In this document: piece after piece, positions 13,396-58,650 of the stretch
How positions within the stretch are numbered: position 1 is the stretch's first letter
Layout of the letters: each line of letters starts with the position of its first letter
Source: Dendrobates tinctorius
Lineage: Eukaryota
Length of the DNA: 64,000 nucleotides
Assembly (NCBI RefSeq): GCF_039654945.1
Contig: NW_027361924.1
Coordinates: 10,540,001-10,604,000, forward strand
Direction of reading: 5' to 3'
Translations under genes and position numbers: made by a program
The notes under the pieces: model-generated
What the model saw: only the letters and a program-made list of their open reading frames with translations
Told to the model about the DNA's origin: nothing
Databases searched by the model: none

Positions 13396-13575
13396 TCACA
13401 AGTCCTTAAACGCCTCCTTGTTCTCCTCCATCCATGACTCCAAGGTCTTGGCTTTGAGGTTGAGCTTTAAGGTGACGTCCACGTCCCGGTTGGGCTGAAT
13501 GATGAAGAAGCGGAACATGTTGGCTATCTCTGCCACTGCGGGGAAGTCGAGCTTCTCAAACGCTTCAACGGTGAT
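13396..13575 (-). CDS. NMRAL1: NMRAL1-A last coding exon
   Basis: cacag|ATC...; [24 protein letters not shown]...EAFKDL*. Confidence 0.92.
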   Translation of the reverse strand: MTVEAFEKLDFPAVAEIANMFRFFIIQPNRDVDVTLKLNLKAKTLESWMEENKEAFKDL

Positions 13576-16500
13576 CTGTGGGAAAAATACACATAAGGGA
13601 CATTGCCGCACAGGCCTCACTACAAGCTAGTGCTCTCTGGTATCAGCCATGTTAGCCAGTTATGTGAGCAGAATTGTGAATGCAGCTCTGGTGAGCGGGT
13701 GTACGCCACCCTGTGCTCAATGAGTATAAAGAACGGGATGGTTGCCTTGTAATGCCCGGTCTACACGGTGGCGGCCATTATGGCGGTGTCCTATCTGAGG
13801 GCGAGAAGCCGCTGATCTTACCTTGGCGTCTTTGAAGTCCTTGCCGGTGACTTTGGACATTATGGCCGCACATTGCGCCACCGTCAGCTTCTCTCTGCTC
13901 AGTCCGATGTTCTTGCCTACGTGATCACATGGAGCCTTCAGGATTCTGACCACCACACCGCCCAAATCTTTGACGGACATCATATGCATGGGCACATCAC
14001 CCATCGGGATGGCTGGAAAGAGAATCAGAGTCATTAAACTGGAGCGACTGATTATCTGTGAGATTGGATGCAACTGTAACAAACCCTCAGCTGTAGCACA
14101 TTACATCCTTGCAGATATTTCAACTGTAGACAAGTGTATGACTAGTCACTGACAGCTAGCAGAGATCTTGGGAGAAAAAAATTTCATTATGCTCCAGAGC
14201 TGCATTCACAGTTGATTTCCTGCTGAAAATTAGGCTGCACAATAGCACGTTACTGCCCCCTGCTGGTGCAACGTGTTTAGTGACTGGCATTAGGAGATTC
14301 CCTGTGCAGGAGTACCGAACACAAGACTGGATGAGGACCTCTGGGCCGCCATTACTAGGGTGCAGGACGGCTCCAGGTTTTCTTGAGCCCCGGGCGAAAG
14401 ACTCTCAGTGGGCTCCTTTAACACAAGCCACAATTCATGATGCACAGAGACGGCAGAGAAAATAGAAATTAGACCTACCGGTACCTGTATTTCTAGGAGT
14501 CCACTATGACAGCACAACAGGAGGTAGCCCTATGTGTCCTCTACGGACAGGAAACACACAAGAGGTTAAAAGCCCCCCCCGCTTCCACCTCACCCCCAGT
14601 GTCTTTTACCAATCCCTACACCAGGATGGATGCTACTTGATTTGATTGAACTCTTACATACAATTGTTAACTCGCATCAGCTTCAGAATTCGGGAGGGAA
14701 TGTAATGGTGCCGTCATGATGGACTCCTGGAAATACAATTATCGATAGGTCTAATTTCTATTTTCCCCAGGACGTCCGTCATGACAGCAGGAAAGGAGAA
14801 ATACCAAATAAATGGCATCCTAGGGTGGGACCACTGCCTGTGGGACCTGGTCGTTATATTAGACCACATTGTGCCCCTGCAGATCTGGTCTATGGAAGCC
14901 CCTGCTCATTCGGCCCAGGATACAGAAATTGCCCTTGTGGAGTGGGCTTTAATTTTAAGACGGGGATCTTTTTTCTCCGACTCGTATGCTAGTGCTATGG
15001 TTGACATGATCCACCTAGACAAAGTTGATTTAGAGGCTTTTTTACCCTTATTCTTTCCCGCATAGTGTATGAATAGATTTGAGTCCTGCCTCCAAGTAGC
15101 TGTGACCTCTACATAGCGCATCACTGCCCTTCTCACGTCTAGTGTGTGAAACAGCCTCTCTCATTCTTTGGGAGATGACAAAAAAGATGGAAGAACGATT
15201 ACTTGGCTCAAATTTGCCTCTACCTTCGGCAAAAAGGACGGGTCAAGCCTAAATATTAACCGATCCTCTAAGATCTGCAAATAGGGATCCCTGACTGACG
15301 GTTCCTGTAATTCACCCAAATGTTTCACCGAGGTGACTGCCACCAGGAATGCCGTCTTCATGCAGAGAAAGTTGATGCTGGATTCTTCCTGGGGCTCAAA
15401 GGGAGAGCTGCACAATGTACCTAACACAAGGTTTAGGTCCCAAGGTGGAATGGTTTCTCTGACTGTGGGTCTTATCCTGGTAATGGCTTGAGAGAACCTC
15501 GCCACCCAAGGTGGTCCGCTAAAGGAAAGTCCATAAAGGCGCTAAAGACAGAGACTTATACCTGTAGTGTACTAGACCACAGGCCCATCTCAAATCCTCT
15601 CTGGAGGAAGTCCAATATTCTGGGAATGTCTGGGCGGGCTGCGCTTGAAGTAGCTTCCCCCATGTAAGAACAGAACCTCTTCCATATTTTGGAATAGATC
15701 ACTGATGTCACTGATTTTGTTATCACCTGTCTGATAACCCCCTGGAGCTTAGGATTTTCCGCTCAGGATCCAGGCCGTCAGGCGCAGAAGACGAGGGTTT
15801 TGGTGCCAGAGGGGACCCTGGGACCGCAGGTCGCGTCTGTCTGGAAAGGGAACAGGATCTTCCAAAGCCATGAGATGTAATACTGGAAACCAACTCCTCT
15901 TGGGCCAGAAGGGCGCTACCAATATCACTGTGGCCTGTTCTCTGATTTTCCTCAGGATCGTCGGTATGAGGGGAAAGGGGGGAAATTCATACAGAAGATC
16001 TTCTTCCCAACTCTGAGATGGGGCATCTATGCCTTCTGGGTTGTCCCCTGGATTCATGGAGAAGAATCTTGCCACCTTCGCGTTCTTCCAGGTCGCAATC
16101 CGGTCTGTATGCGGTGTTCCCCATCTTCGGGTCAACTGGTGGAATACTTCCGGGTTCAGTTCCCACTCGGAGGACCAAACCTTTTCTCTGCTGAGAAAAT
16201 TCGCTGTTAAGTTTTCAAAGCCCTTCAAGTGCACCGCGGAGATGGACTGAACGTTCCTTTCTGCCCACCGAAATATATTTTCTGCTAAGGTCTGTAGGAG
16301 CTGACCCCTTGGACCTCCCTGGGGCAGCAGAAAGGAAACTGCTGTGATGTTGTCAGACAGCACTTTCACATGATGATCTATGACCGTATCCCAACAACGT
16401 TGCAGAGTCTCCCATACTGCCTTTAGCTCTCTGTAATTGGAGGATCTTTTCTGGTCTTCCGGGGACCATGTACCCTGCAGGAATCGACCCTCCACCTCTG

Positions 16501-57800: not shown

Positions 57801-58650
57801 TGGGACAGTTCTTATTCCTAGAGTGACTGGTTATAATTCTATACATAATGGTATCAATAATAAACTATTAGTGTTCTTATTATCTACCGTAACTAAACTT
57901 TGTTTGCTAATATACATGTATTTTTTAAATTTATGTGTTACACCTTTTGTTATTTCTATGGAAGAGCGACACTCCCCCCTCCCCATTCCTCTTCCTTCCC
58001 CATTATATCTCGTAATATTTAAAACAAGAAGTTAAATATTTGTTTCTTACTTTGAGAGGATTGCTACACTTTAACCCAAAAAGTCCCCATTGGTTCACAG
58101 GATGGGCACTCCCTTTTCAAAACCTGTTATTGTCTGCAGCATCTATAGGGTAAAACAGCCAAAGCTGATGGTCTCCCCTGATGGTCTCCCCTGATGGTCT
58201 CCCCTGATGGTCTCCCCTGCAGTAGGCGCCAGCTGCACTTTCTGCCTTCCAGAGGATAGGATTAATACACATATTGACTGCAGCTAAAGGGTTAAACAGG
58301 GGGGTCCCCCCTCCCCCACCATAGCACTTGGGGTCAGTTTCCATGATGAGGCTCCCCCATAAGGAGCCACACACTGCCCCCCGACATTAGGACTGAGGAG
58401 GAGAGAGGAACAGAAAACGGCTTATAAGGTTTCCCATCCCAGGACTAGTGACAGATGATGGGGGTTATAGTCCAGCAGCGCCCCCTGCCTGTACATCGGG
58501 TGGGTGACTTATGGGGCATATACAGCAATCACAGGTTCATCCAGGCACCACCGCCTGCAAGGGAAGAGTTTCCCCCAAACTTCAGCACTCTCCTCCTCCC
58601 CCGCACTCACCTGAGGCTCCAAACACCACGAAGACTTTCTTGTCGGCCAT
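54629..58650 (-). CDS. NMRAL1: NmrA-like family domain-containing protein 1, paralogue C, 299 aa (most conserved copy)
   Basis: Exons 58650-58611, 57215-56977, 56699-56450, 55278-55088, 54808-54629; GT-AG, open frame; W82, H129FDGK133, RLPC154. Confidence 0.94.
55088..55278 (-). CDS. NMRAL1: NMRAL1-C coding exon 4
   Basis: [17 protein letters not shown]...KDAK|gtgag; 191 bp. Confidence 0.93.
56450..56699 (-). CDS. NMRAL1: NMRAL1-C coding exon 3
   Basis: GKLIADL...LHFDGK...RLPCYY; 250 bp. Confidence 0.93.
56977..57215 (-). CDS. NMRAL1: NMRAL1-C coding exon 2
   Basis: GAQGGSV...[15 protein letters not shown]; 239 bp. Confidence 0.93.
58611..58650 (-). CDS. NMRAL1: NMRAL1-C first coding exon
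   Basis: [14 protein letters not shown]|gtgagt; 40 bp. Confidence 0.92.

What the first reader, a model, noticed from the sequence alone, without database searches (positions are those of the whole stretch)
13396..58650. Tandem triplication of normally single-copy NMRAL1 with substitutions concentrated at putative pocket positions
Seen: three complete genes with identical exon sizes. By hand, A vs C differ at 39/299 residues and B vs C at 22/299. The same sites differ in all three copies: 81-82 (YV/FF/FW), 154 (F/S/C), 215-216 (SR/KR/ST), 243 (V/L/P) and the helix [17 protein letters not shown] / [17 protein letters not shown] / [18 protein letters not shown] also changes 128-130 and 185-187 (MHM vs LDG). 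In coding exon 3, A vs C shows 9 non-synonymous vs 3 synonymous nucleotide differences. The first exon is invariant in protein. Inference: diversifying selection on ligand specificity, giving a small lineage-specific family.
Basis: partly seen in the sequence, partly recalled or inferred. Interest (0 to 1): 0.72.

Follow-up and report, generated by a model that had tools for sequence, protein, structure and literature searches.

The report
Poison-frog NMRAL1 tandem gene array
Three intact, already annotated copies of the NADPH-sensor gene NMRAL1 lie side by side in the dyeing poison frog, but they belong to an older and larger gene array typical of frogs, and the evidence that selection reshaped their ligand pocket is only modest.

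Summary
Three minus-strand NMRAL1 genes (A, B, C) each have 5 coding exons, 299 aa and GT-AG introns, and they differ at 44, 39 and 22 residues.

The genome is Dendrobates tinctorius, and my models equal RefSeq proteins XP_073414744, XP_073414743 and XP_073414746. NMRAL1 is not single-copy in frogs. Copies F and D lie just beyond the window. The order D-F-C-B-A matches Ranitomeya variabilis. Nearly every anuran searched has 2 to 15 or more copies. Duplication with positive selection of NMRAL1 was already reported in other frogs (PMC11342244).

Synonymous distances show gene conversion among the paralogues. Codon models give a background omega of about 0.26. A small positively selected site class appears (p = 3e-4 on the ML tree, 0.04 on the orthology tree). 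Only site 154 recurs with posterior above 0.8 on both trees.

Copy A is strongly accelerated (omega 0.9-1.5, not different from 1). Its unique changes hit conserved sites at the random rate, which looks like relaxed constraint. Yet A is intact and is transcribed and correctly spliced in RNA assemblies.

Five sites where all three copies differ are no more than chance. Verdict: a real, ordinary-to-moderately interesting family expansion.

The parts
13396..29331 (-). NMRAL1 copy A (RefSeq XP_073414744.1 = P0285), 15.9 kb. Coding exons 29292-29331, 21943-22181, 21575-21824, 13822-14012, 13396-13575. It is the last gene of the array and the fast-evolving copy (Y81 V82, E128 Y129 C130, F154, M185 H186 M187...).
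   Evidence: Gene model. 100% identity to P0285, accession. Spliced RNA contigs 100% identical to the 3'UTR, exon 5, exon 4 and into exon 3.
44768..50554 (-). NMRAL1 copy B (XP_073414743.1 = P0214; isoform X1 = P0345), 5.8 kb. Coding exons 50515-50554, 48943-49181, 48570-48819, 45012-45202, 44768-44947. Intron 4 is only 64 nt.
   Evidence: The orthologue is R. variabilis P0224 (94% aa).
54629..58650 (-). NMRAL1 copy C (XP_073414746.1 = P0197), 4.0 kb. Coding exons 58611-58650, 56977-57215, 56450-56699, 55088-55278, 54629-54808.
   Evidence: A spliced RNA contig in run X4 matches C-specific letters.
28850..29848 (-). Duplicated promoter and exon-1 block of A. The homologous blocks are 50034-51064 (B) and 58285-58999 (C), 85-88% identical.
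   Evidence: Self-BLAST; exon 1 located.
22991..28090 (+). Ty3/Gypsy-type retroelement remnant (integrase zinc-binding domain, integrase C-terminal/SH3 domain, RT-RNaseH) inside intron 1 of A, antisense to the gene. It is absent from B and C.
   Evidence: ORFs; Pfam hits; break in paralogue homology at 22965-28850.
14466..21299 (-). Insertion block in intron 3 of A. It holds a reverse-transcriptase-bearing element (RVT_1 at 17044-17541) and a 31/62-bp repeat (20423-20916) that is also present in intron 3 of B (46498-47252).
21705..21722 (-). Codons 128-133 of A (E-Y-C-D-G-K). H129Y creates a YxxxK pattern with K133; B and C have L-H-F-D-G-K.
   Evidence: H129 is 98% conserved in 90 non-dendrobatid NMRAL1 sequences. 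The F-type paralogues have N129.

Best explanation
The window holds the three distal members (C, B, A) of a tandem array of NMRAL1 (HSCARG, NmrA-like atypical SDR, NADPH-binding) genes in Dendrobates tinctorius.

Shown: the array reads D-F-C-B-A on the minus strand. The same order, ending next to a LITAF-like gene, is found in Ranitomeya variabilis.

Inferred: the copies therefore arose before these genera split, within a dendrobatoid-wide expansion that is one of many independent NMRAL1 expansions in frogs. The family evolves by birth-and-death plus gene conversion. Conversion homogenises stretches within a species, while a few paralogue-specific residues persist across species (81, 82, 85, 91, 264...).

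Shown: most of each protein is under purifying selection, with background omega about 0.26.

Inferred: a small class of sites (1-4%) probably diversifies. Site 154, next to the conserved P153 after strand beta-6, is the most robust. Sites 82, 92, 243, 257 and 286 depend on the tree.

Shown: copy A of D. tinctorius is an intact, transcribed and correctly spliced gene that has taken a burst of about 24 unique replacements at omega about 1.

Inferred: I read this mainly as relaxed constraint on a redundant copy, possibly with a few adaptive changes, rather than as proven pocket-directed selection.
For: Identity and annotation.
Array layout and synteny.
Multi-copy across Anura and three old anuran clades.
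Orthology groups: A with Rimi P0330/Rvar P0328 at 95/81 support, sister to the B group at 98/85.
Concerted evolution: within-species paralogue dS is 0.07-0.10, against orthologue dS of 0.10-0.16. The third-position tree groups Dtin A, C, D and F at 93/94. Similarity is mosaic. Informative sites support both partitions.
Selection on A: omega_A is 1.52 vs 0.26 background (LRT 18.4, p = 1.8e-5), and omega_A = 1 is not rejected (p = 0.37). On the orthology tree omega_A is 0.92.
Site models: M2a vs M1a gives p = 3e-4 and p = 0.038.
Conservation: A-unique changes hit sites conserved at 95% or more 7 times in 24, against 7.1 expected, while other lineages hit them 5 times in 56.
Autapomorphic nucleotide changes: A has 23N:3S, others 55N:52S, p = 6e-4.
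Expression: run X17 has a 492-nt contig with 0 mismatches over 13133-13575 joined to 13822-13870, skipping the 246-nt intron 4. X17 and X4 have exon-4 contigs with 0 mismatches that run into exon 3. X4 has a spliced contig of copy C.
Fold: the AlphaFold model of A has pLDDT 95 and superposes on human HSCARG 2EXX with Z 44.4 and rmsd 1.3 A over 298 residues.
Against: The branch-site test on A is borderline in favour of positive selection (LRT 2.76, p about 0.05-0.10).
A's 23N:3S also slightly exceeds the neutral expectation (p = 0.05).
An indel-free, stop-free ORF with all splice sites intact is fairly unlikely under pure neutrality: P about 0.25-0.44 for stops, times 0.003-0.06 for indels. A may therefore be more than a relaxed copy.
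My RELAX-like test was uninformative (K = 1.2, p = 0.76).
The paralogue tree is nearly a star and is mosaic because of gene conversion, which undermines all tree-based codon tests.
Orthology of A with the Ranitomeya genes rests on few sites plus synteny.
Expression of B was not shown directly.
Confidence: 0.7

Rival explanations
1. One reading: after duplication, positive (diversifying) selection on residues lining the NADPH/ligand pocket gave the copies different ligand specificities, and copy A is a neofunctionalised member.
For: M2a beats M1a on both trees, with site 154 supported on both and 82, 243 and 257 on the ML tree.
Residue 82 adjoins Y81, and residues 128-130 precede K133. Y81 and K133 are experimentally critical for NADPH binding in human HSCARG (PMC4027218).
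Human NMRAL1 has a ligandable pocket: PDB 2WM3 holds niflumic acid, and 2WMD holds NADP plus a fenamate analogue.
Different paralogue groups carry fixed, cross-species states at 82 (W/F/L/V) and 128-129 (LH/QN/EY).
The branch-site test on A gives p about 0.05, and A shows 23N:3S.
A is expressed and intact.
BUSTED, aBSREL and RELAX found selection on duplicated NMRAL1 in other frogs (PMC11342244).
Against: The signal depends on the tree (p = 3e-4 vs 0.04), and gene conversion inflates such tests.
omega_A is not above 1.
A's changes are placed at random with respect to deep conservation.
The branch-site candidate sites (34, 70, 185, 186, 205, 224, 236, 243, 254, 280, 285) are not the pocket motifs.
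The three-state site coincidence is at chance level.
No 3D distances could be computed, and no ligand is known.
Confidence: 0.25
2. Copy A is on its way to becoming a pseudogene. It is a redundant duplicate freed from selection that still happens to have an open frame and residual transcription, and differences among the copies are largely neutral.
For: omega_A is about 1.
Replacements occur at nearly invariant positions (H129, F130, D186, Y224, P280, F285, A34) at the random rate.
Survival of the ORF without stops is not unlikely under neutrality (P 0.25-0.44).
Large TE insertions lie in introns 1 and 3.
Against: There is no indel in 900 nt, although the non-coding paralogue alignments show 0.11-0.14 gap events per substitution.
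All 8 splice sites and the ATG are intact.
Spliced transcripts of A reach a k-mer depth (113-123) at least as high as that of another paralogue in the same run.
The N:S excess goes beyond the neutral ratio (p = 0.05).
The Ranitomeya orthologues of A are strongly constrained (omega 0.15).
Confidence: 0.2
3. The three copies are an assembly or haplotype artefact of one or two real genes.
For: None found. DNA read depth was not examined.
Against: CDS nucleotide divergence is 7-10%, and non-coding divergence is 9-13% with many indels and different TE insertions.
The assembly is contiguous, without N runs.
Each copy has its own orthologue in the same order in R. variabilis.
Distinct A-type and C-type transcripts occur in RNA assemblies from independent studies.
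Confidence: 0.02

Closest known systems
Human NMRAL1 / HSCARG (PDB 2EXX, 2WM3, 2WMD, 3DXF, 3E5M), an NADPH sensor
   Same: Same length and numbering (299 aa). Exon 3 of copy C is about 72% identical over residues 94-175, and A is 59% identical overall. The predicted fold superposes at Z 44 and rmsd 1.0-1.3 A. The Rossmann motif G11-x-x-G14-x-x-G17, R37 and K133 are all present. In B and C, H129 stands in place of the SDR catalytic Tyr.
   Different: The gene is single-copy in most amniotes in the searches but forms a tandem array here. B and C (and most anuran copies) have F81 instead of the NADPH-binding Y81. A has Y129, M185-H186-M187 and other replacements at positions that are otherwise more than 95% conserved.
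Duplicated NMRAL1 under positive or intensified selection in Pristimantis, Nanorana parkeri and Scutiger sikkimensis (Genome Biol Evol 2024, PMC11342244)
   Same: The same gene is duplicated in frogs, with BUSTED, aBSREL and RELAX signals of diversifying selection after duplication.
   Different: That study used transcriptome orthogroups and an altitude hypothesis. Here the genomic array, its order, gene conversion, a lowland dendrobatid lineage and a single strongly accelerated copy are resolved. My tests give weaker, tree-dependent support.
Annotated dendrobatoid NMRAL1 arrays: Ranitomeya variabilis XP_077130271-282, R. imitator XP_069590906-916, Phyllobates terribilis, Anomaloglossus baeobatrachus (15 or more genes)
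   Same: Orthologous array with the same gene order (D, F, C, B, A, then LITAF-like) and the same 5-exon structure with all CDS 900 nt.
   Different: The Ranitomeya A orthologues are conserved (omega 0.15 between the two species) and keep H129, D186 and Y224. The burst of change is specific to the D. tinctorius lineage among the genomes available.
Aspergillus NmrA and NmrA-like enzymes (CtdP, KstA11, QOR2, triphenylmethane reductase, SimC7)
   Same: Same two-domain NmrA-like fold (Z 25-35) and Pfam PF05368.
   Different: Only 18-26% identity. These are the family's regulators and small-molecule enzymes. No enzymatic activity is known for vertebrate NMRAL1.

Membership tests
NmrA-like family (Pfam PF05368) / vertebrate NMRAL1 | Significant match to the PF05368 profile over the N- and C-terminal parts | tested here: met
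   Exons 2, 3 and 4 of copy C each pass the gathering score (66, 43.8 and 31.1 bits against 27). The database proteins identical to A, B and C carry PF05368.
NmrA-like family (Pfam PF05368) / vertebrate NMRAL1 | Orthology-level similarity to HSCARG with the same length and fold | tested here: met
   PDB sequence search E = 8.5e-35 for exon 3 alone, in the same register. The model of A against 2EXX gives Z 44.4 and rmsd 1.3 A over 298 of 299 residues.
NmrA-like family (Pfam PF05368) / vertebrate NMRAL1 | Rossmann GxxGxxG motif, R37 and K133 (NADPH-binding residues of HSCARG) | tested here: met
   G11-A-S-G14-A-Q-G17, R37 and K133 are present in A, B and C. The role of R37 and K133 is from PMC4027218.
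NmrA-like family (Pfam PF05368) / vertebrate NMRAL1 | Y81, the third residue reported as critical for NADPH binding | tested here: not met
   A has Y81, but B and C have F81. F is the majority state (68%) in 90 non-dendrobatid sequences, which are mostly anuran. This is a frog-wide difference from the human protein, not a defect of these copies.
Classical catalytically active SDR | Ser...Tyr-x-x-x-Lys catalytic residues | tested here: inconclusive
   A has S112, Y129 and K133 by sequence pattern, and Y129 lies at the start of helix 128-142 that carries K133. B and C have H129. Structural equivalence to the SDR Tyr and any activity were not testable. One replacement among 24 falling at this site can be chance.
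Gene family under diversifying selection | A site class with omega > 1 that is significant and robust to the tree and to recombination | tested here: inconclusive
   M2a vs M1a gives p = 3e-4 on the ML tree and p = 0.038 on the orthology tree. Gene conversion is evident, and no recombination-aware test was available.
Gene family under diversifying selection | All members intact and expressed | tested here: met
   The ORFs and splice sites of A, B and C are intact. Spliced transcripts were shown for A and C. B was not shown directly; it only has RefSeq isoform models.

The most novel reading that the evidence does not exclude
Frog NMRAL1 arrays are a birth-and-death family of small-molecule-binding or reducing proteins rather than redundant redox sensors. 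Paralogue groups would be tuned at cleft positions 82, 128-130 and 154. D. tinctorius copy A (S112-Y129-K133, expressed and intact) would be a sensor that has regained SDR-type catalysis on a new substrate.
Probability: 0.07. Interest if true: 0.7.

Novelty: new member of a known kind. Interest (0 to 1): 0.33.

Why it matters
NMRAL1 is studied as a single NADPH/NADP+ sensor that modulates nitric-oxide synthesis, NF-kB signalling and ubiquitination in mammals. In frogs it is a recurrently expanding tandem family, with up to 15 or more genes in one aromobatid. Group-specific residues lie next to known cofactor-binding residues. This family is a natural experiment on how a sensor with an enzyme fold diversifies. 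The poison-frog array is a well-resolved example in which gene order, gene conversion and one runaway copy can all be seen. It does not open a new kind of biology: the genes are annotated, and duplication plus selection of NMRAL1 in frogs is published. The expansions also occur in non-toxic frogs, which argues against a link to alkaloid handling.

Tried and rejected
Word search with exon 3 alone returned only fragments at 72% identity or less, because of the length filter. I therefore used the representative search to reach full-length proteins.

The HSCARG structure paper (PNAS 2007, PMC1885584) is not held. The cofactor contacts beyond R37, Y81 and K133 therefore rest on general SDR knowledge.

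No tool returns model or PDB coordinates. Distances of the variable sites to NADP or to the fenamate ligand could not be computed, so the 'pocket' claim stays inferential.

My first RELAX-like run timed out. The reduced version was uninformative (K = 1.2, p = 0.76).

The look-up of isoform P0243 failed; the longer isoform P0323 worked.

The 'same sites differ in all three' argument was rejected by permutation. The raw 9N:3S count was rejected after normalising for site numbers (omega 0.90).

A test of whether non-synonymous sites follow orthology while synonymous sites follow species was not significant (14:6 vs 26:8, p = 0.75).

A haplotype or assembly artefact was rejected (see rival explanations).

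A link to alkaloid sequestration was considered and set aside, because comparable or larger expansions occur in Eleutherodactylus, Leptodactylus and Anomaloglossus.

The joined (spliced) protein models were never typed into a search tool. Exons were searched by reference. The joined models were built only inside scripts and then replaced by the identical database proteins P0285, P0214 and P0197.
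Full report
OBSERVATION. Self-comparison of the window shows three homologous blocks: A at 12915-14465, 21300-22965 and 28850-29848; B at 44272-45583, 48329-49938 and 50034-51064; C at 54224-55541, 56030-57514 and 58285-58999. They are 77-96% identical. Reading the minus strand gave three complete genes, each with five coding exons of 40/239/250/191/180 nt, GT-AG at all introns and a 299-codon frame. 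The 9:3 count in exon 3 was also reproduced. The window has no N runs.

IDENTITY. I searched the spliced model exon by exon, by reference. Exons 2-4 of C hit Pfam NmrA PF05368. Exon 3 hits human NMRAL1/HSCARG chains 2WM3, 3DXF, 3E5M and 2EXX at E = 8.5e-35 in the same residue numbering. An exon-sized word search found only fragments, so I used the representative search with exon 3. That reached the full-length frog protein P0047, and P0047 was then used for a word search. A local BLAST of my models (built only inside scripts) showed they are 100% identical to three RefSeq proteins of Dendrobates tinctorius on the 11.6-Mb scaffold JAYMGB010000258.1. A is P0285/XP_073414744, B is P0214/XP_073414743 and C is P0197/XP_073414746. 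The window corresponds to scaffold positions 10,540,001-10,604,000.

THE TRIO IS PART OF AN OLDER, LARGER FAMILY. Two more 299-aa copies lie just beyond the window's end on the same strand. F (P0325) is at window-equivalent 71314-85212 and D (P0232) at 92010-107020. A 300-aa member (P0182) lies elsewhere on the scaffold. The order D-F-C-B-A is mirrored in Ranitomeya variabilis. There the order is D280, F275/276, C277, C279, one inverted copy, B281 and A282, followed by a zf-LITAF-like gene. The R. imitator A-type gene and Phyllobates P0201 also abut the LITAF-like gene. In a protein tree A groups with R. imitator P0330 and R. variabilis P0328 (95/81 support). This group is sister to the B group (98/85), and D and F have their own orthologues. 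Across amphibians almost every anuran in the database has several annotated NMRAL1 genes, falling into at least three old clades, with independent recent bursts. Examples are Eleutherodactylus with 6, Leptodactylus with 7 and Anomaloglossus with 15 or more. 'Normally single-copy' therefore holds for amniotes, not for frogs. Duplication of NMRAL1 with positive or intensified selection has already been published for Pristimantis, Nanorana and Scutiger (PMC11342244).

CONCERTED EVOLUTION. I extracted 15 CDS (all 900 nt, no indels) from the window and the fetched loci. Synonymous distances between paralogues within D. tinctorius (A-C 0.085, A-D 0.082, C-D 0.069, B-C 0.093) are lower than between presumed orthologues (A 0.138, B 0.118, D 0.103, F 0.161). 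A third-position tree groups D. tinctorius A, C, D and F (93/94), and the full nucleotide tree is nearly a star. Local similarity is mosaic: B-C exon 2 has dS 0.017, the 5' part of intron 1 has A-B p = 0.023, and the 3' flank is closest between A and B. Informative sites supporting orthology cluster at codons 81-91 and 247-265. Those supporting within-species homogenisation cluster in exon 4. I infer recurrent gene conversion. This weakens every tree-based codon test below.

SELECTION TESTS (my own GY94/F3x4 maximum-likelihood code with NEB posteriors, not PAML or HyPhy). Pairwise omega is 0.75 (A-B), 0.77 (A-C) and 0.385 (B-C). Exon 3 of A vs C gives omega 0.90.

On the ML tree the results are as follows.
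- M0 gives omega 0.29.
- A two-ratio model gives omega_A 1.52 against 0.26 (LRT 18.4, p = 1.8e-5), but omega_A = 1 is not rejected (p = 0.37).
- Branch-site model A on copy A gives LRT 2.76 (p about 0.05-0.10), with 8.5% of sites at omega 5.9. The candidate sites are 34, 70, 185, 186, 205, 224, 236, 243, 254, 266, 280 and 285.
- M2a vs M1a gives LRT 16.2 (p = 3e-4), with 3.9% of sites at omega 3.6. Sites 82, 92, 154, 243 and 257 have posterior above 0.9.

On the orthology/synteny tree the results are as follows.
- omega_A is 0.92 (p = 1.6e-4 against background).
- M2a gives p = 0.038, with sites 286 (0.96), 154 (0.81) and 92 (0.67).

A RELAX-like test was uninformative.

Tree-free counts of autapomorphic nucleotide changes give A 23N:3S against 55N:52S for all other lineages (p = 6e-4). 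That is borderline above the neutral ratio (p = 0.05).

I also compared A's changes with deep conservation, using 90 non-dendrobatid NMRAL1 sequences. A's 24 unique replacements hit sites conserved at 95% or more 7 times, against 7.1 expected at random. The other 14 lineages do so 5 times in 56 (Fisher p = 0.036). A's changes include A34V, H129Y, F130C, D186H, Y224C, P280L and F285L.

The five sites at which A, B and C all differ are no more than expected by chance (P = 0.25-0.71).

IS A ALIVE? Under neutrality, an ORF free of stops after 26-45 substitutions has P = 0.25-0.44. Zero indels has P = 0.003-0.06, given 0.11-0.14 gap events per substitution in the paralogues' non-coding DNA. All splice sites are intact.

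Public run assemblies were laid on 12800-14150 (1351 letters). In run X17, a 492-nt contig matches 13133-13575 and 13822-13870 without a single difference and skips exactly intron 4 (246 nt, GT..AG on the gene strand). Another 0-mismatch contig covers exon 4 and runs on into the end of exon 3. In X4, from a different study, a 0-mismatch exon-4 contig of A does the same, beside a spliced contig whose letters identify copy C. So A and C are transcribed and correctly spliced, and A's unusual residues in exons 4-5 are confirmed by independent data.

Runs X1 and X2 carry a related sequence that matches R. imitator's A orthologue at a diagnostic site. Expression of B was not shown directly.

STRUCTURE. 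With a 50-sequence alignment, A folds at pLDDT 95.1. The model superposes on HSCARG-NADP (2EXX) at Z 44.4 and rmsd 1.3 A over 298 residues. Human entries with niflumic acid (2WM3) and with NADP plus a fenamate analogue (2WMD) show that the family has a ligandable cleft. The next neighbours are NmrA-like enzymes and NmrA itself.

R37, Y81 and K133 are reported as critical for NADPH binding (PMC4027218). By homology, 82 adjoins Y81, 129 is one helical turn before K133, and 154 follows the conserved P153 after strand 147-151. That 81-82, 128-130 and 154 line the cofactor/ligand cleft is therefore a reasonable inference from SDR knowledge. I could not compute distances, and nothing was established for 215-216, 243 or the 251-267 helix.

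Paralogue groups do carry fixed, cross-species states at 82 (W, F, L, V) and 128-129 (LH, QN in the F group, EY in A). This is the best qualitative argument for functional tuning.

VERDICT. This is a real, annotated, expressed tandem family. It is older and larger than a triplication, and it evolves by duplication, gene conversion and mostly purifying selection. It shows modest, tree-dependent evidence for a few diversifying sites. One copy (A) has divergence best described as relaxed constraint, with possible adaptive admixture. It is a new member of a known kind, of moderate-to-low interest.

Noticed in passing
window 22213-22434 (A), 49213-49422 (B), 57247-57456 (C), minus strand: A conserved alternative first exon ([15 protein letters not shown]...GVCFG with a GT donor) lies about 30-70 nt upstream of exon 2 in all three copies. 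RefSeq isoform X1 of B (P0345, 317 aa) uses it. That product would lack strand beta-1 and the first glycine of the Rossmann motif.
   Followed up: partly
window 40593-41374 and 59341-61351: The same 23-bp minisatellite (TCGCCCCATCACCCTGCAGAACA; 34 and 87 copies) lies in two intergenic spacers of the array, A-B and C-F. It is probably part of the duplication unit or a substrate for unequal exchange.
   Followed up: no
window 1-6031, 6918-9659, 30674-32758, 33231-37408, 62178-64000: Large tandem arrays surround the genes: an 86-bp satellite with 71 copies, a 20-bp array, 44-bp and 40-bp arrays, and a 52/101-bp array. About a quarter of the window is satellite or minisatellite.
   Followed up: no
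window 20423-20916 (intron 3 of A), 46498-47252 (intron 3 of B), 61366-61763 (inverted): A 31-bp repeat family (TATATTGCTCCATACAGAATAATGAGCCCCA) is shared by intron 3 of A and of B. It occurs again, inverted, upstream of C.
   Followed up: no
window 41918-42395 and 51097-51574 (inverted, 93% identical): Two inverted copies of a transposon-like segment with an ORF (MSRRQSLT...KEGKPQKVIAKEAGCS...) and no Pfam hit. One lies in the A-B spacer and one just upstream of B's exon 1.
   Followed up: no
window 44948-45011: Intron 4 of B is only 64 nt, against 246 nt in A and 279 nt in C, owing to an internal deletion. It still has GT-AG ends.
   Followed up: partly
L003 (D. tinctorius F), L008 (R. variabilis F); proteins P0325, P0326, P0234, P0243, P0230: All F-type paralogues, in five dendrobatoid species, carry Q128-N129 instead of L128-H129, together with L82. 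This is a fixed, cross-species change at the position that is Tyr in copy A and His elsewhere.
   Followed up: partly
Anomaloglossus baeobatrachus, cluster of P0221; locus L011: At least 15 distinct annotated NMRAL1 genes occur on one chromosome of this non-toxic aromobatid, many more than 90% identical. This is the largest expansion seen in the searches.
   Followed up: no
tree: One Monodelphis protein (P0266) groups with salamander sequences (Lissotriton P0252, Pleurodeles P0278/P0280) inside the frog clades rather than with the other amniotes. This could be long-branch attraction or an old second paralogue.
   Followed up: no
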